This document shows, piece after piece, positions 9,598-30,930 of a stretch of DNA of 64,000 bases. The notes below the pieces were generated by a model, which did not search any database, was not told the origin of the DNA, and worked only from the letters and a program-made list of their open reading frames with translations. The stretch is taken from positions 1 to 64,000 of IMG/VR virus record IMGVR_UViG_3300023179_004149; one strand, given 5' to 3'. Position numbers and translations under genes: made by a program. Position 1 is the first letter of the stretch; every line of letters starts with the position of its first letter.

Positions 9598-9602
9598 AAA
9601 TT

Positions 9603-9640
9603 AAAAAACCCCAGATACTTTCGTAACCTGGGGTTTCTAT
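9603..9640 (-). terminator. Attenuator terminator 1
   Basis: AAACCCCAG...CTGGGGTTTTTT directly before the first tRNA of cluster 1. Confidence 0.85.
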
Positions 9641-9653
9641 CTTTTTTACTCTT

Positions 9654-9773
9654 TTATGCTCCTGTATCTGATACATTAACATTTCGAGTATAGAAACCCC
9701 TTCCGTGTTCATACGCTGGGTATGACGGTTCATAACTTGATGCTGACCAGGATGTTAATACTGAGTTTCTCAT
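9654..9773 (-). CDS. Leader peptide 1 (39 aa, MRNSVLTSWSASSYEPSYPAYEHGRGFYTRNVNVSDTGA)
   Basis: Manual translation; S/W/Y/E/P-rich core; contains an 11-nt perfect complement of the terminator left arm. Confidence 0.8.
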   Translation of the reverse strand: MRNSVLTSWSASSYEPSYPAYEHGRGFYTRNVNVSDTGA

Positions 9774-9806
9774 TTTATTTTCTTTTTATTTTTTTTTATA
9801 AAAATC

Positions 9807-9855
9807 AGGATGTTTTTGTATTTCGTACCAGAAATTAAATTGCTGAACACATCCT
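9807..9855 (-). ncRNA. CAGCAA-box RNA, short form
   Basis: AGGATGT-GTTCAGCAA...ACATCCT terminal stem. Confidence 0.5.
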
Positions 9856-9873
9856 CTGTTTATATAATTATTG

Positions 9874-9905
9874 CAAAAGTAAGCAAAGTTCTCGAAACTA
9901 CCAAA
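9874..9905 (-). promoter_or_regulatory. Bacteroidota-type primary-sigma promoter (representative of at least 14 copies)
   Basis: TTTG (-33), 20 nt spacer, TACTTTTG (-7, consensus TAnnTTTG). Confidence 0.8.
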
Positions 9906-13000: not shown

Positions 13001-13072
13001 GGGTCAAGCACGGTATCGATCCGAGTTCTCCTGATTCACAGTCAGGCACATCACCTTAATGCTTCAAGACCC
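13001..13072 (-). tRNA. tRNA-His(GTG)
   Basis: CCTGA-CTGTGAA-TCAGG; G-1:C73 possible; A54-type T loop. Confidence 0.85.
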
Positions 13073-13999: not shown

Positions 14000-14003
14000 A
14001 TGT

Positions 14004-14041
14004 AAAACTAAAAATGCTCCAGGGTTCACCTGGAGCATTTG
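14004..14041 (-). terminator. Attenuator terminator 2
   Basis: AAATGCTCCAGG/CCTGGAGCATTT 12-bp stem plus T-tract directly before tRNA-Lys(CTT). Confidence 0.85.
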
Positions 14042-14064
14042 CTAAATTTTATTCTTAAACCCTG

Positions 14065-14145
14065 TTAAGAATTAGACAAATAGTCACCAGGCATAGTTTT
14101 AGCTATGACGTGTTTAATATGCTTTATAATGACTAACTGTTTCAT
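14065..14145 (-). CDS. Leader peptide 2 (26 aa, MKQLVIIKHIKHVIAKTMPGDYLSNS)
   Basis: Manual translation; V/I/K/H core; 3' part complementary to the terminator left arm. Confidence 0.8.
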   Translation of the reverse strand: MKQLVIIKHIKHVIAKTMPGDYLSNS

Positions 14146-14247
14146 CTTATTGATTGTTTATGTTGTTTTAAAATTGTTCTCTTTAATAATTATTACAAAA
14201 GTACGAAAAGTTCTTGATTTTGCAAAGTTTTTTTCAAATATTTTTTT

Positions 14248-15871: not shown

Positions 15872-16062
15872 CTTTCTCGTTAAAATACTGTTTTAATTCG
15901 TCAATGGTACAGTCCAATCGATATGATATCATATCTTTGGACATGGATAAAAGATAATTTTTAACATCTGTTAAAAAAGATATCATCTCTTCTTTCCACT
16001 CTTCAGTACCGACAATATGTTTTGTCTTCATCTTTATAGTTTTATATCTATAAATATCAGAG

Positions 16063-16135
16063 TGATTCCAGTGGGGATCGAACCCACACCTAATTGATTT
16101 AGAGTCAACTATACTGCCGATTATACTATGGAACC
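16063..16135 (-). tRNA. Amber suppressor tRNA (CTA)
   Basis: GTTGA-CTCTAAA-TCAAT anticodon arm; complete cloverleaf, short variable loop, A73. Confidence 0.85.
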
Positions 16136-16260: not shown

Positions 16261-16334
16261 AGGACAAGGATAGGATCGAACTACCGTTTGAGACTTTGCA
16301 GGTCCCCGCCTAATAACCACTCGGCCACTTGTCC
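16261..16334 (-). tRNA. tRNA-Cys(GCA)
   Basis: GGGAC-CTGCAAA-GTCTC; U73. Confidence 0.88.
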
Positions 16335-16705: not shown

Positions 16706-17149
16706 TTACCTATAAATAGCGATGGAATTAGAAATTAAACCATAACATTGACTAAAATCAAAATCTGAATGCAATTCGGGATTAATATAAACACAACCTT
16801 TAATAGGTTTTTGTCCCCAAATGACATTATACCATTTGCTTGTCCTGGCTATCGGATCTTTGTCGATAAAGAAATAATTCAATTTAGTACCCATAGGATC
16901 CAAATCGTAAAACCTGTCAATGATTGTTAGATCATGACATTGCAACCATAACTTATGGTGGTGTTTCTCTAACCAATCGATATCCAACTTGTATTCAGGT
17001 TTGTAGGTACCCAAATAGAGTTGATTGTCCTGGAGCCAAAGGTCGACTTTAACATCAAACCCTTGGTTGATTGCTTGTTCAATATGTTCTGGTTTATTGT
17101 CATTATCGGTTAATCCAAAAAGATTACCAGCGTTTGATATTAGTTTCAT
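16706..17149 (-). CDS. Glycerophosphodiester phosphodiesterase-like protein, catalytic motifs degenerate
   Basis: ISNAGN, GFDVKVDLW and LYLGTY align to the usual IAHRGN, GYDVEIDV and LYLGHD. Confidence 0.55.
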   Translation of the reverse strand: MKLISNAGNLFGLTDNDNKPEHIEQAINQGFDVKVDLWLQDNQLYLGTYKPEYKLDIDWLEKHHHKLWLQCHDLTIIDRFYDLDPMGTKLNYFFIDKDPIARTSKWYNVIWGQKPIKGCVYINPELHSDFDFSQCYGLISNSIAIYR

Positions 17150-17601
17150 TATTTATTTCTTTTTTCGTTTTCAGTTTCGTCTGGTGTTAATAACCCACGA
17201 CCATATTTTTCAATCCTATCTTTATACCTGTTTTTCACACGTTCACCGATAGGTACTGGGTTACCTTCTTCATCGATACGCACAAACTTAATATTTGTCT
17301 GAGTTACGACTTCCTGAATACCAGTATATACGTTATGTTTACGTACCTCAATATAAAGTGTTAGTGATGTGGTACCAAACTCTTTAACCTCACCATAAAC
17401 TTTGATCAGGTTACCGACTTTTACTGGTTTTTTAAACAAGAGTTCATCAATTTTTAATGTTACAACTCTTGGATTGTCACATATTTGCATGGCGTATGCC
17501 GCTGATGCGTCGTCAATGAGGGACATAATATCACCACCGAACATGTTGTCGTGTATGCCGATATTTTTTCCTTTGCTGATATAGGTAGTTATGAGTTCCA
17601 T
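17149..17601 (-). CDS. Acyl-CoA thioesterase (hotdog fold, YciA-like)
   Basis: NMFGGDIMSLIDDAS, VVTLKID.L.FKKPVKVG, G.TS, FVRIDEEGNPVP. Confidence 0.88.
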   Translation of the reverse strand: MELITTYISKGKNIGIHDNMFGGDIMSLIDDASAAYAMQICDNPRVVTLKIDELLFKKPVKVGNLIKVYGEVKEFGTTSLTLYIEVRKHNVYTGIQEVVTQTNIKFVRIDEEGNPVPIGERVKNRYKDRIEKYGRGLLTPDETENEKRNK

Positions 17602-18385: not shown

Positions 18386-18469
18386 AAATTAAAATTATTT
18401 GTTAATTTCTTAGTCACCATCACTGGTGTGCAGTAGCCACTACGTGCAAGTGAATTAACTTCGGCTACT

Positions 18470-18554
18470 TACCTCAGATGGGAGTCGAACCCACACGACC
18501 CTTACGGGTCACAGGTTTTTAAGACCTGCATGTCTACCATTCCATCACCGAGGC
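18470..18554 (-). tRNA. tRNA-Leu(TAA)
   Basis: CAGGT-CTTAAAA-ACCTG; long variable arm. Confidence 0.9.
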
Positions 18555-18614
18555 AGGTGTTTTATAAATAGAGTACAAAAGTAGTAAAACTTTTTGAATC
18601 CTCCAAATGTTTTT

Positions 18615-19202: not shown

Positions 19203-19413
19203 TATTCAAATCTTTAAATGAGGCCCAGGTTATCCACCCTGTACCGTTACCAAAGTTATGTGTTCTGTTATTATAGAACAGAACTTTACACATTTCGGTC
19301 TTTTCATCAACCTCAAGCACTTTACAACTTGTATTCAATTTTGATGAATTATATTCTTTAGGTGTTTCTGGTTTCATTTTACAAAAATAATAAAAGAACT
19401 TCAAAAAAACAAG

Positions 19414-19484
19414 TACTCCTATTCCGTAACGATCAGAATTCTCATGAGTCAAAGTCATGCGCATCACCTTAATGCTTTAGGAGT
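19414..19484 (-). tRNA. tRNA-Gln(TTG)
   Basis: ACTCCTA/TAGGAGT acceptor; CATGA-CTTTGAC-TCATG; A54-type T loop. Confidence 0.85.
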
Positions 19485-19490
19485 ATATAG

Positions 19491-19561
19491 TAGTGCCTAA
19501 TGGATTCGAACCATTGATACAACTTTCAGAGAGTTGAGTGTTACCGCTACACTAAAGCACT
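19491..19561 (-). tRNA. tRNA-Gln(CTG)
   Basis: CAACT-CTCTGAA-AGTTG. Confidence 0.88.
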
Positions 19562-19567
19562 ATTTTG

Positions 19568-19624
19568 TAGTCCCCGAAGGATTCGAACCCTCACCAAGTA
19601 TGCTTACCGTTACACCAGAGAACC
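19568..19624 (-). ncRNA. Anticodon-armless tRNA-like RNA (57 nt)
   Basis: Acceptor, D arm and T arm intact; D and T arms joined by only ACTTGGT. Confidence 0.65.
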
Positions 19625-19724
19625 ATAGCCACGTAAATCGGATTCCATACCGATATCTTATACCCTCCGTAGGTAGTGTGCAATTTACTCACGTCTGAGT
19701 ATGGATCTTACACTTTTACGCTTG

Positions 19725-19798
19725 TACCCCTAACGGGATTCGAACCCGTAAACTTCTGGGTCTAAACCAGACGACTTTCCCATTTTGCCCACAGGGGT
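19725..19798 (-). tRNA. tRNA with TAG anticodon (Leu) and short variable loop
   Basis: TCTGG-TTTAGAC-CCAGA; 5-nt variable region. Confidence 0.78.
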
Positions 19799-19805
19799 GT
19801 GTTTG

Positions 19806-19887
19806 TGATCGAAGAGAGACTCGAACTCTCAAACCCGAAGGTATGGGTTTCTTAGACCCACGTGTATACCAATTCCACCATTCGACC
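19806..19887 (-). tRNA. tRNA-Leu(AAG)
   Basis: TGGGT-CTAAGAA-ACCCA; long variable arm. Confidence 0.85.
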
Positions 19888-19893
19888 TTATTG

Positions 19894-19967
19894 TGACTTC
19901 TTTTGGATTCGAACCAAAAATCTGAACTTTCGTAGAGTCCTATGCTTATCCGTTGCACCAAGAAGCC
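19894..19967 (-). tRNA. tRNA-Arg(ACG)
   Basis: GGACT-CTACGAA-AGTTC. Confidence 0.88.
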
Positions 19968-20009
19968 AAAAAAAGAAAAAACCCCCAGTCGCTTTGCGTC
20001 CAGGGGCTA
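19968..20009 (-). terminator. Attenuator terminator 3
   Basis: GCCCCTGG...CTGGGGGT plus a long T-tract abutting tRNA-Arg. Confidence 0.85.
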
Positions 20010-20036
20010 AATATTTTTGCTTATCTCTTTTAATTG

Positions 20037-20138
20037 TTAATAACAATCATCATCTTCATAACAAGCAATACTCGCCCCTTCTCTTAGTTGTAAGAGTTGT
20101 AACTGGCGTTGACGTAATATGTTAGTTATGTTTTTCAT
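20037..20138 (-). CDS. Leader peptide 3 (33 aa, MKNITNILRQRQLQLLQLREGASIACYEDDDCY)
   Basis: Manual translation; 12 consecutive L/R/Q codons; AGGGGCGAGTATT pairs with the terminator left arm. Confidence 0.82.
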   Translation of the reverse strand: MKNITNILRQRQLQLLQLREGASIACYEDDDCY

Positions 20139-20172
20139 TTTATATAAATAGTTTAGTTTTTTACAAAAGTTA

Positions 20173-20273
20173 CAATTCATCGGATTATTTTAGAAAATCC
20201 CCGTGGGGACTTTTGGAGTTGAACCAAATTTACAAATTTAACCAAAGTAGTTGCTGGAAATAATCCCGAATTG
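20173..20273 (-). ncRNA. CAGCAA-box RNA with an internal T-loop-like hairpin
   Basis: CAATTCGGGATTATT-TCCAGCAA...TTGG-TTCAACT-CCAA...AATAATCCGATGAATTG. Confidence 0.6.
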
Positions 20274-20340
20274 TTTTACAAAAGTAAGAAGAGTTTTTGA
20301 ATTAAACAAGTCTTTTTAAAAGTTTTTTCAGATATTTTTT

Positions 20341-20961
20341 TTACCACATGCGATTTCTCATTGCGGCCCTATCTTGTATATCAAATAAAGTAAGGTTCCC
20401 ACTTTTATCGTAGCCCAGGTTTCCGTAATTAACATCTGGTGTTCTTATACCCAATTGGGTACATGATCTATAAATTGTTGCGAGATCATCCATGAATTTT
20501 ATTGTTTCTGGTGTCAAAGGCCCTTCTGAACCATCATATTCGTCCTCATCAAATGAGCCCGTTTGTGATATATCGAGTCCTTGGGTTGTTAATATCATCT
20601 CAACGGTTTGAAAAATATCTTCTATCGATGAATCGGTATCGAGTTCTTCCATCACAATATAATAAAGTTTAGGTTTTTCATCACGATACCAACCTCGTGT
20701 ATATATTTTTACTAAACCAGGTAATTGGTGATTTTTAACTTGACTGGCGAGATAGAATTCATTTTCGGAATTTGTAATCTTAAGGACCGTGCCATTGCCG
20801 AGTGAATAAGCATTACCGTATTCACCTTGACCAATCCAATCAACCGAATTGAATTCTATACCTTCATCTCTTAAAAACGTTATTAAATCGTCTTGATCAA
20901 CACTTTCGATCAAAGCAATCATGGTTTTTATTTTTTTGAGTGCCTCGTTTAACTTATTCAT
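20341..20961 (-). CDS. Protein-kinase-like (PKL fold) protein
   Basis: IGQGEYG Gly loop, VLK, YYIVMEEL, D..YGN, LFD. Confidence 0.7.
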   Translation of the reverse strand: MNKLNEALKKIKTMIALIESVDQDDLITFLRDEGIEFNSVDWIGQGEYGNAYSLGNGTVLKITNSENEFYLASQVKNHQLPGLVKIYTRGWYRDEKPKLYYIVMEELDTDSSIEDIFQTVEMILTTQGLDISQTGSFDEDEYDGSEGPLTPETIKFMDDLATIYRSCTQLGIRTPDVNYGNLGYDKSGNLTLFDIQDRAAMRNRMW

Positions 20962-22275: not shown

Positions 22276-23871
22276 ATGAATATTTCAGATTTTCTAATAA
22301 AAGACTCATATGATTATGTCTTACAATCGGATTTAACCACGGGTGTTGTTTACCGAATTGGTGGTGATGTTCCAGTAAACCCAACATTTGCGTCTGGTTT
22401 AACGGTTAATGAAAATTTTACATATAAAGATGGTTCGGAACAAAATGGTTATGTATTAACTTCTGACGCTGACGGTAAAGCTTCCTGGAAATCAGTTAGT
22501 GGTGCGGTTAGTGGTAGTAACGGTACATCTGGTAGCTCTGGTGAAAGTGGTTCATCTGGTAGCTCAGGATCTTCTGGTAGTAATGGTGAAAGTGGTTCAT
22601 CTGGTTCATCGGGGTCATCAGGGTCATCAGGTACTTCAGGAACAAGTGGTATAAATGGTATTTCGGGTGGGGCGATTTATTACTTCAATCAATCCGTAAC
22701 CCAAACCCCATATAATGAATTTTCAACATTATCAACCACCGCATCTCAACAAACATCTACAGTCACTATTGCAAAGGGTGCAACATCAACAATTAATTCA
22801 TATTTAACCCCATCAAATATACCAAACGTATCGGTTATTCCGCCAGGTATTTGGTCATTTTATCTGCACACATATAAAGAAGACAGTAACTCATCATTTG
22901 AAATTTTTTGTCGGGTTTATTCAAAAGCTATAGATGGAACTGAAACTTTATTATTTGAAACAGATCCCGCACCAGTAACGAGTATTTCACCAAATCCATC
23001 AATGGTATTAACCGATGTGTATCAGCCAGGGTATTCTATCAATACAACTGATAGAATCATAGTTAAAGTAAGTGCAACCAATACATCTAATCAATCACAC
23101 TCAATTACATTTGTAACAGAAGGTACTGTTCATTATTCTTATGGACAAACAACATTAGGTATTTTTGGTAACTCTGGTTCATCTGGTTCATCTGGTTCAT
23201 CGGGATCATCTGGTTCATCTGGTTCATCGGGATTATCGGGATCATCTGGTTCATCTGGTTCATCGGGATTATCGGGTTCATCTGGTTCATCGGGATTATC
23301 GGGTTCATCTGGTTCATCGGGATTATCGGGATCATCTGGTTCATCTGGTTCATCGGGATTATCGGGATTATCGGGATCATCTGGTTCATCGGGATTATCG
23401 GGATCATCTGGTTCATCGGGATTATCGGGATCATCTGGTTCATCGGGATTATCGGGATCATCTGGCTTAAGTGGTACATCTGGTAGCTCAGGCACATCAC
23501 CAGATATAACGAACGCTAAAATAGGTACTATAACATTTATAGCTGATGGAAGTGGTGGTGTTATTACCACTGGTAGTAAAGGGTATATAACAATACCATA
23601 TAATGGAACACTTTTATCTTGGTATTTATTTGCTGACCAGTCTGGTTCTATATCAATAGATATTAAAAAATGCAATTATAGTACGTTTCCAACCACTACA
23701 AGTATTGTAGCTGGAAATTATCCAAATTTAACGAATCAACAAAAAAACACGGATTCAACATTAACTGGATGGGATACATCATTAAACAGTGGGGATATTC
23801 TTGAATTTGTTATAAATTCAACAATTAGTGTTAGCCACACAACATTACAATTAACAATACAAAAAGCATAA
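22276..23871 (+). CDS. Ser/Gly-repeat virion fibre-like protein
   Basis: Two (SGS/SGL)n tracts separating beta-rich domains. Confidence 0.7.
   Translation: MNISDFLIKDSYDYVLQSDLTTGVVYRIGGDVPVNPTFASGLTVNENFTYKDGSEQNGYVLTSDADGKASWKSVSGAVSGSNGTSGSSGESGSSGSSGSSGSNGESGSSGSSGSSGSSGTSGTSGINGISGGAIYYFNQSVTQTPYNEFSTLSTTASQQTSTVTIAKGATSTINSYLTPSNIPNVSVIPPGIWSFYLHTYKEDSNSSFEIFCRVYSKAIDGTETLLFETDPAPVTSISPNPSMVLTDVYQPGYSINTTDRIIVKVSATNTSNQSHSITFVTEGTVHYSYGQTTLGIFGNSGSSGSSGSSGSSGSSGSSGLSGSSGSSGSSGLSGSSGSSGLSGSSGSSGLSGSSGSSGSSGLSGLSGSSGSSGLSGSSGSSGLSGSSGSSGLSGSSGLSGTSGSSGTSPDITNAKIGTITFIADGSGGVITTGSKGYITIPYNGTLLSWYLFADQSGSISIDIKKCNYSTFPTTTSIVAGNYPNLTNQQKNTDSTLTGWDTSLNSGDILEFVINSTISVSHTTLQLTIQKA
23173..23490 (+). 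repeat. Tandem 9-nt coding repeat (TCTGGTTCA / TCGGGATTA / TCGGGATCA)
   Basis: Directly visible; encodes SGS/SGL units. Confidence 0.9.
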
Positions 23872-23875
23872 AATT

Positions 23876-24115
23876 ATGACTTACAAAATTATTAACGCAA
23901 CACAATATGGTGATTCAATTAATACAGTCGTTGAATTAACAATTGATAATCAGACATCTCAAGTTACGATTGCGCATTTTCGACCAAACTCAGTAACTGA
24001 AATTTATCAAAATATTGAAAACAGAATGATGAGTGAACAGGCCGCATTACTAGCAACGGCAACATGTGGTAACATAATAAATAATATAAAAATTGGTGAA
24101 ATCGTAACAGTATAA
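23876..24115 (+). CDS. Small protein, possible fibre assembly chaperone
   Basis: Sits between two structural genes. Confidence 0.5.
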   Translation: MTYKIINATQYGDSINTVVELTIDNQTSQVTIAHFRPNSVTEIYQNIENRMMSEQAALLATATCGNIINNIKIGEIVTV

Positions 24116-25698
24116 TGGCCACAAAGTACTTTGTAAATGGTGGCGGTGGAGCGTGGAATAACACGTTATCTTGGTCATTAAGTAGTGGTGGTGGTGGTGG
24201 TGCTGGCGTACCAACAGCATCGGATGATGTGATTTTAAATGCGAATAGCCCCGCTTGTACTGTATCAACAACGGCGGGTGTTTGTTTATCGTTTACCGCA
24301 ACCAATTACACATCATTATTAACCGCCAATGTTAACATTACGGTTTCGGGAAATTTAACATTTGGATCGGCAATGACGTTCGCTGGTACTGGTACTATAA
24401 TTGTTAATGCAACAGCTACGTTAACAAGTAACGGTGTTACTGTGGGGTTACCATTAACATTAATTTCGGGTGTATCTACGACCTGGACTTTGGGTGATAA
24501 TTTTACAATGAATAAATTATTCCAGACACAAGGTTCAACAGGTGGTTTAACATACACTATTAACGGTAACATATTAACCTTATTAGCTGGCGCTTCATTT
24601 AATGGTGGTAGCGGATCATCCGCCACCATCACAAATGGTACAACAAATATTGTTATTGCGGGTACTGGTACGTATACTATTGGTAATGGCTCATTGCGAA
24701 ATAATGTAACTATCAACGCCCCAGGACAGATTTTAACCTTTCCAACATGGGTATATAATACAGGAACGCTAACATATACGGCTGGTACTATTAACGGCAC
24801 ACCGACTTGGACTTTTAATGGTTCAGTAACATTAGATACGAGTTCAACGACTATATATGATATGCCTGTTTTAGTTAATATTAGTGCGGCAACGGTCGTT
24901 CTTACGTTACTTAGTGATTTTCGCACATCACGTGGCCTTACATTAGCGGCTGGTGGTAACCTTACAATTAATAATTTTTCTTTTTATATTAGTGGTGGTG
25001 TATTTACACCAAACTCATCAGTATCTGGTACGGCAACAATTATTTTAGGTGGTGTCAATGGTGCCAGCACCGTAACTTGGTCTGGTTCGTCAAGCGTTAG
25101 AACAAATATTACAATTAATACACCTGGTACGGTTACGATATCGGGCACTATTTTATATAGTACGGGTACCTTTACTTATACAGCTGGGGTAGTCAATACG
25201 GTTGGTTCAACAATTAATATTGGTGCAGCAACAACATTTAATACGGTGGGTATGTCGTTTAATAATATTACATTAACTGCGGCCATTACATTAACACTTA
25301 ATTCAACCTTATCAGTAAGCGGCACATTAACTTGGGGTGCTTTATCACAAACATTTACAGGAACAGCGGGATTTAATGTTGGGTCGTTAGTCGTATCAGC
25401 CGTTAACGGTAATTCAGTAACACTTTTAAGTGGTGTTGAATACATCGTTAATAATAATTTTTCAATAGCGTCCACATCAACAAATAGATGGACATTAAAA
25501 TCAAGTAACTCTGGTGTACAAACTATATTTACATTAAAACCTGCGGCATCACAATTAAGTTCATTTGTTACCACCACTGATATTAACAGTAGTAACGGAC
25601 AAACAATTTGGTGCTGGAATATATCGCAAACTAACACAACTAATTGGTATAGTTTGGTACCATCCGCAATGCAAAATTCAGCGATTTATATAACTTAA
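24115..25698 (+). CDS. Thr/Gly-rich beta-solenoid virion or adhesin-like protein
   Basis: GGGAWNN..SWS..SGG..GA.VPT..DDV start and recurring TLTYTAG/GTFTYTAG units. Confidence 0.65.
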   Translation: MATKYFVNGGGGAWNNTLSWSLSSGGGGGAGVPTASDDVILNANSPACTVSTTAGVCLSFTATNYTSLLTANVNITVSGNLTFGSAMTFAGTGTIIVNATATLTSNGVTVGLPLTLISGVSTTWTLGDNFTMNKLFQTQGSTGGLTYTINGNILTLLAGASFNGGSGSSATITNGTTNIVIAGTGTYTIGNGSLRNNVTINAPGQILTFPTWVYNTGTLTYTAGTINGTPTWTFNGSVTLDTSSTTIYDMPVLVNISAATVVLTLLSDFRTSRGLTLAAGGNLTINNFSFYISGGVFTPNSSVSGTATIILGGVNGASTVTWSGSSSVRTNITINTPGTVTISGTILYSTGTFTYTAGVVNTVGSTINIGAATTFNTVGMSFNNITLTAAITLTLNSTLSVSGTLTWGALSQTFTGTAGFNVGSLVVSAVNGNSVTLLSGVEYIVNNNFSIASTSTNRWTLKSSNSGVQTIFTLKPAASQLSSFVTTTDINSSNGQTIWCWNISQTNTTNWYSLVPSAMQNSAIYIT

Positions 25699-28651: not shown

Positions 28652-28889
28652 AAATGAGGCGATTATTCGGTACGCCTCGATTCCCTATCCACCCATTTGC
28701 GGTGGCTCCAGCGGCATCTGTTTTTTTTAAACCTTTCTACTAATCGTTTGTCTATACGACCAGGTTCATTCAGACACGGTAGTGTCAACTCTGACGAGAA
28801 CGCCATGTGCAGCGTTAATAATTGATTGATTTTTCATTTTGCTCAACCAAGAAAACACGGTGACTTTTAGTGAGTTTCCCCTCTCATTG

Positions 28890-29010
28890 TTGGGCACGAG
28901 GGAATTGAACCCCCACCTCTCGCTTATGATGCAAATTGTCGTTAAATGTGCTGAATTAAATCCCTACGGATTGTCCGATGTTTAACGTGCTACCATTACA
29001 CTAATGCCCA
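28890..29010 (-). ncRNA. tRNA-like RNA with a large insertion carrying a CAGCA box
   Basis: TGGGCAT/GTGCCCA acceptor, D arm and T arm intact; insertion with AATCC-GTAG-GGATT hairpin then TTCAGCA; residual CAT loop. Confidence 0.7.
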
Positions 29011-29021
29011 ATATTTTTTCG

Positions 29022-29093
29022 AGGACACACTCAGAACCGACCTGAGAACTCATGCTTACAAGGCAAGTATTTTTCCAGCTAAACTATGCGTCC
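29022..29093 (-). tRNA. tRNA-Thr(TGT), atypical T loop
   Basis: CTTGC-CTTGTAA-GCATG; CTCAG-GTCGGTT-CTGAG. Confidence 0.7.
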
Positions 29094-29235
29094 AATTCAA
29101 CTTTTAAATTATCCCCAGAGTTGCAACTGTGCTGGAATACGATCCAGAGGTTTAGTGGCTGGTAACGTAATATACCTTAACCAGACTTTCCTATCTTCGA
29201 TCCATGATGGTCGACCATCAGAGGGCTTTTGTTAG

Positions 29236-29514: not shown

Positions 29515-29599
29515 TGGCGGTCTCGATGGGATTCGAACCCATGATCTTCGCCGTGACGCGTTACAGGGCGACAGGGACGACCAACTCCCCTACAAGACC
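29515..29599 (-). tRNA. tRNA-Asp-like gene with a 7-nt insertion in the anticodon loop
   Basis: TCGCC-CTGTAACGCGTCAC-GGCGA; G73; encoded CCA. Confidence 0.75.
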
Positions 29600-30238: not shown

Positions 30239-30253
30239 AAATACTTTAATAAG

Positions 30254-30378
30254 TCCCGACAAGAGGACTCGAACCTCTACCTTTTTCGTTTAAAGAAATT
30301 GTTTTTAGATAATGACTTGCTGTAACCATCCACTCTGGATGACTCTGTTTTTTAATGCTACCATTACACCATGTCGGA
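30254..30378 (-). ncRNA. tRNA-like RNA with a large insertion carrying a CAGCAA box
   Basis: TCCGACA/TGTCGGG acceptor, D arm and T arm intact; insertion CATCCA-GAG-TGGATG-GTTACAGCAA. Confidence 0.72.
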
Positions 30379-30758: not shown

Positions 30759-30834
30759 TGGTGGCACGGCCACGAGTTGAACGTGGGACACCCAGATTTT
30801 CAGTCTGGTGCTCTACCAACTGAGCTACCGCGCC
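30759..30834 (-). tRNA. tRNA-Phe(GAA)
   Basis: CCAGA-CTGAAAA-TCTGG; encoded CCA. Confidence 0.92.
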
Positions 30835-30849
30835 ATTTTATTTGTATTA

Positions 30850-30930
30850 CAATTCATCGGAATGGGTCTTTTAGCTTGAATCATTAAGAGTGAATTGCTT
30901 GTAGAGTTTGCTGTAATCATTCCCGAATTG
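30850..30930 (-). ncRNA. CAGCAA-box RNA
   Basis: CAATTCGGGAATG-ATTACAGCAA...CATTCCGATGAATTG; same terminal stem as 20173-20273. Confidence 0.6.

What the first reader, a model, noticed from the sequence alone, without database searches (positions are those of the whole stretch)
19968..20138. Attenuator 3: twelve consecutive Leu/Arg/Gln codons before Arg, Leu, Leu, Gln, Gln tRNAs
Residues 8-19 (TTA CGT CAA CGC CAG TTA CAA CTC TTA CAA CTA AGA) are all L/R/Q. The cluster encodes Arg(ACG), Leu(AAG), Leu(TAG), Gln(CTG) and Gln(TTG), with Leu(TAA) a little further on. AGGGGCGAGTATT (20079-20067) pairs with AATATTTAGCCCCT (20015-20002), which overlaps the terminator left arm.
Basis: partly seen in the sequence, partly recalled or inferred. 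Interest (0 to 1): 0.9.

Follow-up and report, generated by a model that had tools for sequence, protein, structure and literature searches.

The report
Codon-matched attenuator switch before phage tRNAs
A huge phage places a tiny test gene, made of exactly the codons read by the tRNAs that follow it, in front of a transcription stop signal, so the tRNA genes appear to be switched on only when decoding of those codons falters, a control not previously described for tRNA genes.

Summary
On the minus strand a 33-codon ORF (20138-20037) has twelve consecutive Leu/Arg/Gln codons. A GC hairpin plus a 14-nt T-run follows and ends one base before tRNA-Arg(ACG), Leu(AAG), Leu(TAG), Gln(CTG) and Gln(TTG).

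The attenuator reading is strongly supported by comparison, though not by experiment.
- Twelve syntenic relatives keep the ORF, with in-frame indels only, and keep the terminator. They also keep a GGGGY:RCCCC antiterminator with compensatory changes.
- Two more devices of the same design sit in the window. One has K/I/V/H codons before Lys, Lys, Ile, Val, His, Ile. The other has S/W/Y/E/P codons before Tyr, Pro, Pro, Ser, Trp, Ser, Glu.
- A prediction made beforehand held. A relative's terminator-led His/Phe/Met/Asn/Asp... cluster has a leader with 15 consecutive cognate codons.
- Other huge phages gave two further classes: F/D/E/A before Phe, Glu, Asp, Pro, Ala, and L/V/C before Cys, Val, Leu x3.
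- The true leader-to-cluster pairing is the single best of 720 permutations.
- When Ile, His, Val, Ser or Cys tRNAs sit in a different cluster, that cluster's leader carries their codons.

I found no description of leader-peptide attenuation of tRNA genes. I rate it a new variant of classical ribosome-mediated attenuation and of high interest.

The parts
20279..20310 (-). Promoter of Bacteroidota type: CTTG, 20 nt, TACTTTTG (-33/-7 elements)
   Evidence: Read. The motif TTTG-N17-23-TANNTTTG occurs 19 times in the window against 5.9 expected, with 0 of 100 shuffles reaching 19. The element is conserved in all 8 aligned relatives. That these are the -33/-7 elements of Bacteroidota promoters is my own knowledge.
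20170..20270 (-). Structured 5' leader element of unknown role. It starts with GGGATT..CAGCAA, is closed by AATCC, and contains a tRNA T-arm-like hairpin at about 20225-20200.
   Evidence: A similar element follows the promoter at 30924. It is conserved only in the closest relatives.
20037..20138 (-). Leader ORF of 33 codons plus TAA
   Evidence: The same ATG and a 27-33 codon ORF are present in 12 relatives. All indels within the coding part are multiples of 3. The AT-rich context without a Shine-Dalgarno sequence matches the other leaders.
20082..20117 (-). Regulatory run: 12 consecutive Leu/Arg/Gln codons
   Evidence: Eleven of twelve are decoded by the downstream tRNAs. It is the top window of 127,930.
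20111..20121 (-). Region 1: 5' strand of the anti-antiterminator/pause helix. It lies inside the start of the run and pairs with 20076-20066.
   Evidence: Minimum-free-energy structure. The equivalent GCCU:GGGC pairing appears in the free folds of most relatives. This is prediction only; I saw no covariation.
20081..20096 (-). Small conserved hairpin CUCUUA-CAAC-UAAGAG inside the run
   Evidence: It is nearly invariant in the alignment. It means part of the codon conservation here is also structural.
20067..20079 (-). Region 2: antiterminator 5' strand (AGGGGCGAGTATT), starting directly after the run
   Evidence: It pairs with region 3 in the nascent-RNA folds of all 12 homologues. The core of 6 pairs is 94% paired, with C-G to U-A in 5 sequences and A-U to U-A in others.
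20002..20015 (-). Region 3: antiterminator 3' strand (AATATTTAGCCCCT), which overlaps the terminator 5' arm
19982..20006 (-). Terminator hairpin (regions 3:4), -16.1 kcal/mol
   Evidence: It is 88% paired across 12 sequences, with 3 pairs changed on both sides. The internal mismatch stays at the same position.
19968..19981 (-). T-run (TTTTTTCTTTTTTT), ending one base before the tRNA
   Evidence: GGGGTTTTTT is invariant in relatives.
19893..19967 (-). tRNA-Arg(ACG), the first regulated gene
19805..19887 (-). tRNA-Leu(AAG)
19724..19798 (-). tRNA-Leu(TAG)
19490..19561 (-). tRNA-Gln(CTG)
19413..19484 (-). tRNA-Gln(TTG)
18469..18555 (-). tRNA-Leu(TAA), which reads the three TTA codons. It lies further downstream, behind two ORFs, and has its own promoter at 18607-18576.
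   Evidence: In relative L006 this tRNA lies inside the attenuated cluster.

Best explanation
This is a ribosome-mediated (leader-peptide) transcription attenuator that controls a phage tRNA gene cluster.

Transcription starts at the Bacteroidota-type promoter near 20279-20310 and proceeds through a 33-codon leader ORF. The outcome depends on how the ribosome moves through the twelve Leu/Arg/Gln codons.
- Ribosome moves smoothly: region 2 (20079-20067) is covered by the ribosome or re-captured by region 1. The terminator (20006-19982 plus T-run) then forms, and RNA polymerase stops one base before tRNA-Arg.
- Ribosome stalls: this happens if any of the aminoacyl-tRNAs reading those codons is scarce. 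The stalled ribosome sits on region 1, so region 2 is free. Region 2 pairs with region 3 (20015-20002) before the terminator's 3' arm has been made. Polymerase reads on into Arg(ACG), Leu(AAG), Leu(TAG), Gln(CTG) and Gln(TTG), and possibly as far as Leu(TAA).

Because the products are the tRNAs that decode the test codons, the circuit is a negative feedback on decoding capacity.

What is shown:
- the anatomy;
- conservation of the device;
- covariation of the two competing helices;
- codon-to-tRNA matching across six leader classes.

What is inferred:
- translation of the leader;
- termination in vivo;
- the direction and kinetics of the switch.
For: Anatomy
- Searches give the anatomy.

Statistics
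- 12 of 12 cognate amino acids and 11 of 12 cognate codons. This is the unique maximum of 127,930 windows.

Conservation
- Twelve syntenic loci were reached through the upstream 206-aa protein.
- All carry a 27-33 codon ORF with an L/R/Q(/I) run, frame-preserving indels, and a terminator abutting tRNA-Arg.

Covariation
- Antiterminator core: 94% of cells paired, 2 pairs changed on both sides, 0 of 500 shuffles reaching the covariation score, and a collapse when the partner is slid by 1-3 columns.
- Terminator: 88% paired, 3 pairs changed on both sides.

Folding
- With the run masked and the 3' arm absent, the antiterminator forms in all 12 homologues.
- It also forms in 4 window/relative leaders and in 8 more distant leaders.

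Same design elsewhere in the window
- 14145-14000: K/I/V/H codons before Lys, Lys, Ile, Val, His, Ile.
- 9773-9598: S/W/Y/E/P codons before Tyr, Pro, Pro, Ser, Trp, Ser, Glu.
- The cognate-codon matrix scores 9-11 on the diagonal and 1-4 off it.

Prediction test
- I saw a terminator in front of tRNA-His in L002 first and fetched the upstream DNA afterwards.
- It holds a 27-codon ORF with 15 consecutive cognate codons. These sample all 9 tRNA identities of that cluster.

Survey of 80 IMG/VR loci
- L/R/Q, K/I/V/H and Y/P/S/W leaders recur in two more distant phages.
- Two new classes appear: F/D/E/A before Phe, Glu, Asp, Pro, Ala, and L/V/C before Cys, Val, Leu, Leu, Leu.

Assignment test
- The true pairing of 6 leader classes with 6 clusters is the only one of 720 permutations to reach the observed score.
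- Over all 17 leader-cluster pairs compared, own-cluster pairs average 9.6 of 12 and different-class pairs 2.6.

Relocations
- Ile(GAT) sits in the Arg cluster in L002, L006, L007, L021 and L012. Only there does the leader carry ATT ATT.
- His and Val sit in the Lys cluster here but in the His-led cluster in L022, and each receiving leader has their codons.
- Ser(TGA) joins the Lys cluster in L046, whose leader has Ser codons.
- Cys(GCA) joins the Tyr cluster in L062, whose leader has a Cys codon.
Against: - There are no experimental data. The host is uncultured and is inferred only from the promoter type.
- The match is not perfect.
  - AGA is read by a tRNA in another cluster.
  - Ala codons in leaders 1 and 2 have no cognate tRNA in the window.
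  - The L008 and L015 leaders keep Gln codons, but ARAGORN and Rfam find no Gln tRNA in those loci.
  - The L062 Lys leader has Ser codons without a Ser tRNA.
- tRNA-Leu(TAA) has its own promoter.
- Part of the run is a conserved hairpin, so some codon conservation is structural.
- A ribosome stalled on the last 3-4 codons of the run would cover region 2.
- With the 5' part masked, the equilibrium fold of the full-length leader still prefers the terminator for the three window leaders, though not for the L022 leader. The switch must therefore be kinetic, as in classical attenuators.
- The relatives are phylogenetically related. The covariation and the Ile association therefore rest on few independent events.
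- Other clusters lack the device: Phe..Gly at 30834 and Cys/suppressor at 16334. In the survey only 13 of 41 clusters are terminator-led.
Confidence: 0.8

Rival explanations
1. General translation-capacity or amino-acid-starvation sensor. The device is an attenuator, but it responds to any slowing of ribosomes or to amino-acid supply. Its real targets would be the protein ORFs downstream (about 19380-18615) rather than the tRNAs.
For: Two ORFs follow the tRNAs before the next promoter. Leader attenuators classically report charged-tRNA levels, which depend on amino-acid supply as well as on tRNA amount.
Against: The tRNAs are the constant partners of the leader across relatives, while the ORFs after them vary. 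Leader codon content follows tRNA content when tRNAs move between clusters. Six different codon sets make no sense for a generic sensor.
Confidence: 0.1
2. Untranslated structured 5' leader. The hairpins serve processing or stability of the tRNA precursor (for example RNase P or RNase E entry), and the ORF is incidental.
For: The run contains a conserved hairpin (CUCUUA/UAAGAG). The leader also carries other structured elements upstream. There is no Shine-Dalgarno sequence.
Against: - Indels inside the ORF are all multiples of three, while those after the stop codon are not.
- The start codon and an open frame are kept in every relative, although the C-terminal halves diverge.
- Substitutions within the run stay within the cognate amino-acid set.
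- Lack of a Shine-Dalgarno sequence is normal in Bacteroidota (my own knowledge).
- The codon-to-tRNA match only exists in one reading frame.
Confidence: 0.06
3. Ordinary small-protein gene with an ordinary, leaky terminator. The resemblance between peptide composition and tRNA identity is coincidence.
For: Short ORFs and terminators are common in phage genomes. An L/Q-rich peptide could be a coiled-coil fragment.
Against: - The run has p about 1e-10.
- The same coincidence would have to recur for six different amino-acid sets. The assignment test gives 1 of 720.
- A prediction made in advance succeeded.
- The peptide C-termini are not conserved, whereas the nucleotides that pair with the terminator arm covary.
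Confidence: 0.04

Closest known systems
Classical leader-peptide transcription attenuators of amino-acid operons (trpL, hisL, leuL, thrL, ilvL, ivbL, pheL) in Proteobacteria
   Same: A short leader ORF with a run of regulatory codons. Four RNA segments form mutually exclusive 1:2, 2:3 and 3:4 helices. An intrinsic terminator precedes the first regulated gene, and the read-out is ribosome position. Multi-amino-acid leaders are known: thrL uses Thr and Ile, ilvL uses Ile, Val and Leu (my own knowledge).
   Different: - The regulated genes here are tRNA genes, not biosynthetic enzymes.
- The leader samples the codons of up to nine different tRNA species.
- The regulated product feeds back directly on decoding of the leader.
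- The setting is a phage with Bacteroidota-type promoters.
- There is no sequence similarity, and no Rfam leader family matched at gathering threshold.
pheM leader of the pheST operon (phenylalanyl-tRNA synthetase) in E. coli
   Same: It is a leader-peptide attenuator that controls a component of the translation apparatus rather than a biosynthetic pathway (my own knowledge).
   Different: It controls a synthetase, not tRNA genes, and reports a single amino acid. I checked a remembered lead that the E. coli tRNA-Phe gene pheV has such a leader. It does not: only about 105 nt with a promoter separate yqgA from the tRNA.
T-box riboswitches
   Same: They also couple tRNA status to read-through of an intrinsic terminator through a competing antiterminator.
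   Different: T-boxes bind uncharged tRNA directly without translation, have a specifier loop and a conserved T-box sequence, and regulate synthetase, transporter and biosynthesis genes. No T-box match was found in the window. Here the signal is read by a translating ribosome.
Phage-encoded tRNA clusters as compensation for host tRNA loss or codon-usage mismatch
   Same: This is the same class of cargo: large tRNA arrays in big phages, thought to sustain late translation or to replace tRNAs destroyed during infection (my own knowledge of that literature).
   Different: I know of no description of these clusters as regulated by the decoding demand they serve, and nine full-text searches found none. 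Bacteroides phage DAC19, checked as an outside example, has no such device before its tRNAs.

Membership tests
Ribosome-mediated (leader-peptide) transcription attenuators | Short ORF in the transcribed leader between the promoter and the first regulated gene | tested here: met
   A 33-codon ORF at 20138-20037 lies downstream of a conserved promoter. It is conserved in frame in 12 relatives.
Ribosome-mediated (leader-peptide) transcription attenuators | Cluster of regulatory codons cognate to what is regulated | tested here: met
   12 consecutive L/R/Q codons, of which 11 are read by the downstream tRNAs. The rule holds for six leader classes.
Ribosome-mediated (leader-peptide) transcription attenuators | Intrinsic terminator (GC hairpin plus U-run) before the first regulated gene | tested here: met
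   Hairpin of -16.1 kcal/mol and a 14-nt T-run ending 1 nt before tRNA-Arg, with covariation in 3 pairs. Termination itself was not tested.
Ribosome-mediated (leader-peptide) transcription attenuators | Antiterminator helix mutually exclusive with the terminator | tested here: met
   20079-20067 pairs with 20015-20002. The core is 94% paired, 2 pairs change on both sides, and the slid controls collapse. It forms in all nascent-RNA folds.
Ribosome-mediated (leader-peptide) transcription attenuators | Anti-antiterminator/pause helix (1:2) whose 5' strand is covered by a ribosome stalled at the regulatory codons | tested here: inconclusive
   It is predicted in the free minimum-free-energy folds of the window leader and of most relatives. 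I saw no covariation, and pausing is not testable here.
Ribosome-mediated (leader-peptide) transcription attenuators | Leader is translated and read-through rises when the cognate aminoacyl-tRNA is limiting | not testable with these tools
   Only indirect support is available: frame-preserving indels and substitutions that stay within the cognate set.
Ribosome-mediated (leader-peptide) transcription attenuators | Regulated genes make or charge the cognate amino acid (as in all described members) | tested here: not met
   The regulated genes are tRNA genes. This is the point of novelty. It bears on 'member of the described set', not on the mechanism.
Rfam leader families (Leu, Thr, His, Trp leaders and others) | Match to the family covariance model at gathering score | tested here: not met
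   Only tRNA matches were found in the whole window.
T-box riboswitch | Match to the T-box covariance model (specifier loop, T-box sequence) | tested here: not met
   No T-box hit in the window at gathering threshold.

The most novel reading that the evidence does not exclude
A modular family of at least six codon-matched leader classes makes tRNA supply in a group of huge Bacteroidota phages demand-driven and self-limiting. Each tRNA cluster would be transcribed only when decoding of exactly the codons it serves becomes limiting, and its own products would shut it off again. This would let the phage sense and repair loss of specific host tRNAs during infection, for example through host shut-off, codon-usage mismatch or anticodon-nuclease defences. 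The leaders would in effect be natural codon-resolved sensors of tRNA availability.
Probability: 0.6. Interest if true: 0.93.

Novelty: new variant of a known kind. Interest (0 to 1): 0.9.

Why it matters
tRNA genes are usually thought to be controlled at promoters (growth rate, stringent response) or to be simply constitutive in phages. A ribosome-read attenuator in front of tRNA clusters would be a new layer of control of the translation apparatus.

It would also be a direct autoregulatory loop between a tRNA and its own codons.

It bears on the long-standing question of why phages carry tRNAs and when they use them, and it makes that question testable. The leaders state which codons the phage monitors.

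Because they are short and modular, the leaders could also serve as codon-specific biosensors.

For annotation, short ORFs directly before tRNA arrays in large phages deserve to be called and read.

Tried and rejected
- **E. coli pheV lead.** I remembered that the E. coli tRNA-Phe gene pheV has a Phe-rich leader. It does not.
- **Rfam on the whole window.** Only tRNAs matched; there was no known leader, T-box or riboswitch.
- **Exact-pattern scans of IMG/VR for the leader-3 motif.** They found only the window's own contig and one relative.
- **Scan for the GGGGTTTC..GAAACCCC..GGGGTTTTTT design.**
  - It added one unrelated contig, L026.
  - L026 has a 46-codon ORF containing all 20 amino acids, followed by a terminator and then what looks like a sigma-70 promoter.
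  - I could not fetch its downstream DNA. The tRNA-based follow-up hit a different phage without a leader. L026 is left open.
- **Scan of 185,579 GTDB genomes for the leader-3 core motif.** It gave 9 hits, all chance matches inside unrelated genes with no tRNAs nearby.
- **Bacteroides phage DAC19 tRNAs.** No terminator or leader precedes them.
- **Contig look-ups that returned no DNA.** P0018 and P0003.
- **Most distant homologue of the flanking protein.** L016 (40% identity) has protein genes after it, not a tRNA cluster.
- **Two terminator-led clusters in the survey.** L061 (Phe, Lys, Met, Trp) and L087 (Asp, Met, Met) have upstream ORFs with only weak cognate enrichment. I count them as unclear, not as support.
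- **False terminator calls.** Some terminator calls in L046, L061 and L095 lie inside tRNAs or are weak, and I discarded them.
- **Built-in terminator scan.** It missed the terminators of leaders 1 and 3, apparently because of the mismatch or wobble pairs. I located them by eye and by folding.
- **Literature.** Nine full-text searches found nothing on attenuators or leader peptides in front of tRNA genes. Subscription-only papers were not searched.

Full report
**What is there.** The window is the first 64 kb of a 320,934-bp IMG/VR contig, IMGVR_UViG_3300023179_004149 (also Ga0214923_10000005). It has 34.6% G+C. ARAGORN finds 31 tRNA genes, all on the minus strand and grouped in clusters. Rfam adds two more, including a tRNA at 13001-13071 whose anticodon loop reads GTG (His).

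Promoters are of the Bacteroidota type, TTTG-N-TAnnTTTG. This motif occurs 19 times against 5.9 expected, and none of 100 shuffles reaches 19.

At the finding's coordinates the minus strand carries the following elements in order:
- an ATG at 20138;
- 33 codons and TAA at 20039-20037;
- a hairpin, 20006-19996 paired with 19992-19982 (-16.1 kcal/mol);
- a 14-nt T-run, 19981-19968;
- tRNA-Arg(ACG), starting at 19967.

Codons 8-19 are twelve consecutive Leu/Arg/Gln codons. The tRNAs that follow are Arg(ACG), Leu(AAG), Leu(TAG), Gln(CTG) and Gln(TTG), with Leu(TAA) further on.

**Is it more than chance?** L, R and Q together make up 14.2% of codons in the window's long ORFs. The codons readable by these six tRNAs under standard wobble make up 12.1%. 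Twelve of twelve by amino acid, and eleven of twelve by codon, give binomial p of about 7e-11 and 9e-10. Among all 127,930 twelve-codon windows in six frames this is the only place that reaches 11.

**Relatives.** The 206-aa protein encoded just upstream (20341-20961) has 23 homologues of 34-90% identity in metagenomes. I retrieved their loci from IMG/VR, JGI, ENA and Logan. Twelve distinct syntenic leaders resulted.
- Each has the conserved promoter.
- Each has an ORF of 27-33 codons starting at the same ATG, with a run such as RQQQLQLLQLR or IIRLQQLQLLILR.
- Each has a GC hairpin with GGGGTTTTTT directly abutting tRNA-Arg(ACG).
- Within the ORF all alignment gaps are 3, 6, 9 or 12 nt, whereas after the stop codon they are of any length.
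- The peptide C-termini differ freely between relatives.

This is the pattern of a translated ORF whose peptide sequence does not matter.

**Competing structures.** The segment directly after the run (AGGGGC..., 20079-20067) is complementary to the 5' flank and arm of the terminator (...GCCCCT, 20015-20002).
- Across the 12 sequences the six-pair core is 94% paired.
- One pair switches C-G to U-A in five sequences, and the outer pair switches between A-U and U-A.
- None of 500 column shuffles reaches the covariation score. Sliding the partner by 1-3 columns drops pairing to 24-64%.
- The terminator is 88% paired, with three pairs changed on both sides and a mismatch kept at one fixed position.

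I then modelled the nascent RNA with the run masked, as by a stalled ribosome, and the terminator's 3' arm not yet made. In that model the GGGGY:RCCCC helix closes the predicted structure in all 12 homologues.

In the free full-length fold of most homologues, the same G-rich segment instead pairs with the CGCC of an Arg codon inside the run, and the terminator forms.

So the four segments of a classical attenuator are all present. Segment 1 lies inside the regulatory codons.

**The same device at other clusters.**
- Window 14145-14065 encodes a 26-codon ORF whose centre is VIIKHIKHVIAK.
  - A terminator at 14040-14012 follows, and then Lys(CTT), Lys(TTT), Ile(TAT), Val(TAC), His(GTG) and Ile(GAT).
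  - Both Lys codons and both Ile codon types are used, matching the two Lys and two Ile tRNAs.
- Window 9773-9654 encodes an ORF with SWSASSYEPSYPAYE.
  - A terminator follows, and then Tyr, Pro, Pro, Ser(TGA), Trp, Ser(GCT) and Glu.
- The matrix of cognate codons in the best 12-codon window scores 10, 9 and 11 on the diagonal and 1-4 off it.
- In both devices the G-rich segment after the run pairs with the terminator's 5' arm. The pairings are GGGGUUUC:GAAACCCC and CCUGG:CCAGG.

**A prediction that could have failed.** In relative L002 I saw a terminator abutting tRNA-His at the very edge of the locus, heading a cluster of His, Phe, Met, Asn, Asp, Met, Met, Thr, Gly, Gly, Met, Val and Arg(TCT). 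I predicted a leader rich in those codons and then fetched the upstream DNA. It holds a promoter and a 27-codon ORF. Fifteen consecutive codons of that ORF (GMTFGRVNDHTDRGF) are all cognate and sample all nine tRNA identities. GGGGUUUC again pairs with the terminator arm.

**A wider survey.** I used a conserved thioesterase gene (17149-17601) as an anchor and obtained 80 IMG/VR loci. Twenty-four of them contain tRNAs, in 41 clusters, and 13 clusters are terminator-led.
- Two more distant phages (L046, a 299-kb contig, and L062) have L/R/Q, K/I/V/H and Y/P/S/W leaders before the corresponding clusters.
- L050/L051 have a new class, FDFAFEFAAEAD before Phe, Glu, Asp, Pro, Ala.
- L056 has another, LVLVLCLLV before Cys, Val, Leu, Leu, Leu.
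- All eight of these show the same alternative folds.
- Taking one representative of each of six classes, the true leader-to-cluster assignment is the only one of 720 permutations that reaches the observed score.
- Over all 17 leader-cluster pairs, own-cluster pairs average 9.6 of 12 cognate codons and different-class pairs 2.6.

**Codons follow tRNAs.**
- tRNA-Ile(GAT) lies in the Lys cluster in this phage and in L014. It lies in the Arg cluster in L002, L006, L007, L021 and L012, and only those Arg leaders carry ATT ATT before the Arg codon.
- His and Val are in the Lys cluster here and in the His-led cluster in L022. Each receiving leader has their codons.
- Ser(TGA) joins the Lys cluster in L046 together with Ser codons in its leader.
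- Cys(GCA) joins the Tyr cluster in L062 together with a Cys codon.

These are few events among related genomes, so I treat them as supportive rather than as a statistic.

**Mechanism proposed.** Transcription from the promoter at about 20310-20279 runs through a structured 5' element and the leader.

*Unhindered translation.* The ribosome passes over segment 2 and stops at 20039. Segment 2 is then either separated from segment 3 by the ribosome or re-paired with segment 1. The terminator forms, and polymerase releases in the T-run, one base before tRNA-Arg.

*Stalling.* If any tRNA for the run is scarce, the ribosome stalls and covers segment 1. Segment 2 then captures segment 3 before segment 4 exists. 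Polymerase reads into the tRNAs, and RNase P would then cut off the leader.

The new tRNAs relieve the stall, which closes a negative feedback loop.

The anatomy, the conservation, the covariation and the codon matching are shown. Translation, termination and the kinetics are inferred.

**Caveats.**
- The codon AGA and the Ala codons have no cognate tRNA in their own cluster.
- L008 and L015 keep Gln codons without a detectable Gln tRNA.
- L062's Lys leader has Ser codons without a Ser tRNA.
- tRNA-Leu(TAA) has its own promoter here.
- Part of the run is a conserved hairpin.
- Stalls on the last few codons of the run would cover segment 2.
- With the 5' part masked, the equilibrium fold of the full-length leader still favours the terminator for the three window leaders, though not for the L022 leader.
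- Other clusters in the window lack the device.
- The host is unknown.

**Comparison with what is known.** In logic this is a trp/his/thr-type leader-peptide attenuator. It differs in what it regulates (tRNA genes), in sampling up to nine tRNA species in one leader, in its direct product feedback, and in belonging to a phage.
- No Rfam leader or T-box family matches.
- A remembered lead about E. coli pheV proved wrong.
- An unrelated Bacteroides phage lacks the device.
- No bacterial genome in the GTDB set carries the leader-3 motif.
- Nine full-text literature searches found no description of attenuators before tRNA genes. Absence from that library is not proof of absence.

**Verdict.** I rate it a new variant of a known kind of regulation, with interest 0.9.

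Noticed in passing
window 14000-14226 (minus strand): A second attenuator of the same design. It consists of a promoter at 14226-14196, a 26-codon leader at 14145-14065 (centre VIIKHIKHVIAK) and a terminator at 14040-14012. The regulated genes are Lys(CTT), Lys(TTT), Ile(TAT), Val(TAC), His(GTG) and Ile(GAT), and the unit ends at a terminator at 12800-12775.
   Followed up: yes
window 9598-9905 (minus strand): A third attenuator. It consists of a promoter at 9905-9874, a 39-codon leader at 9773-9654 (SWSASSYEPSYPAYE) and a terminator ending at about 9600. GGGGTTTC pairs with GAAACCCC. The regulated genes are Tyr, Pro, Pro, Ser, Trp, Ser and Glu.
   Followed up: yes
window 13001-13071 (minus strand): A tRNA found by Rfam (38 bits) but missed by ARAGORN. 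Its anticodon loop reads CTGTGAA, so it is tRNA-His(GTG). This explains the two His codons in leader 2.
   Followed up: partly
window 16062-16135 (minus strand): A tRNA with anticodon CTA (amber suppressor; ARAGORN labels it 'Pyl') next to tRNA-Cys. The same pair recurs in relatives (L010, L014, L040, L041). It suggests TAG recoding in part of the genome. This cluster has no attenuator.
   Followed up: no
window 19568-19624 (minus strand): A 57-nt partial tRNA match (Rfam, 32.9 bits) between Leu(TAG) and Gln(CTG). It appears to lack an anticodon arm.
   Followed up: no
window 28889-29094, 29515-29599, 30253-30378 (minus strand): Odd tRNA-like genes. One has an 8-nt anticodon loop (tgta). With intron search switched on, ARAGORN calls two with insertions of 43 and 132 nt. 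A further tRNA fragment lies at about 30120-30075.
   Followed up: partly
window 20267-20170 and 30924-30860 (minus strand); also 9857 and 30150: A repeated structured element directly downstream of promoters. It starts with GGGAWT..CAGCAA and is closed by a complementary AWTCC. The copy upstream of leader 3 contains a T-arm-like hairpin resembling that of tRNA-Arg. Relatives carry one to three such units. Its function is unknown.
   Followed up: partly
window 17149-17601 (minus strand): An acyl-CoA thioesterase of the YciA/4HBT type, 70-75% identical to more than 1,800 proteins. Many of those are on long contigs, including NCBI records, so the gene looks host-derived. It is widespread in huge-phage contigs of IMG/VR (175 confirmed matches).
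   Followed up: partly
L013 11026-11755: A 214-aa ORF with a Cys-rich nuclease-like motif lies between the attenuator plus a tRNA-Arg 5' fragment and a complete tRNA-Arg. It looks like a homing-endonuclease insertion into or next to the tRNA gene.
   Followed up: no
L026 1454-1660 (IMGVR_UViG_3300046819_000086): An unrelated phage contig with a 46-codon ORF that contains all 20 amino acids. GGGGTTTC inside the ORF is complementary to the arm of the following terminator. About 110 nt further on there is a sigma-70-like promoter and a tRNA. It could be an analogous sampler leader or a chance match.
   Followed up: partly
L015 2700-11600: Downstream of the Arg/Leu tRNAs this relative carries a TnpB-like fragment followed by bacterial-looking genes (TonB-receptor plug, PnuC-type transporter, NadR-like AAA, FAD oxidoreductase). 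These could be auxiliary genes, a prophage junction or a chimeric assembly.
   Followed up: no
window 22276-23871 and 24115-25698 (plus strand): Two large ORFs of about 530 aa. The one at 22276-23871, whose translation I saw, has long Gly-Ser-Ser collagen-like repeats. They are probably fibre proteins and sit between the tRNA clusters.
   Followed up: no
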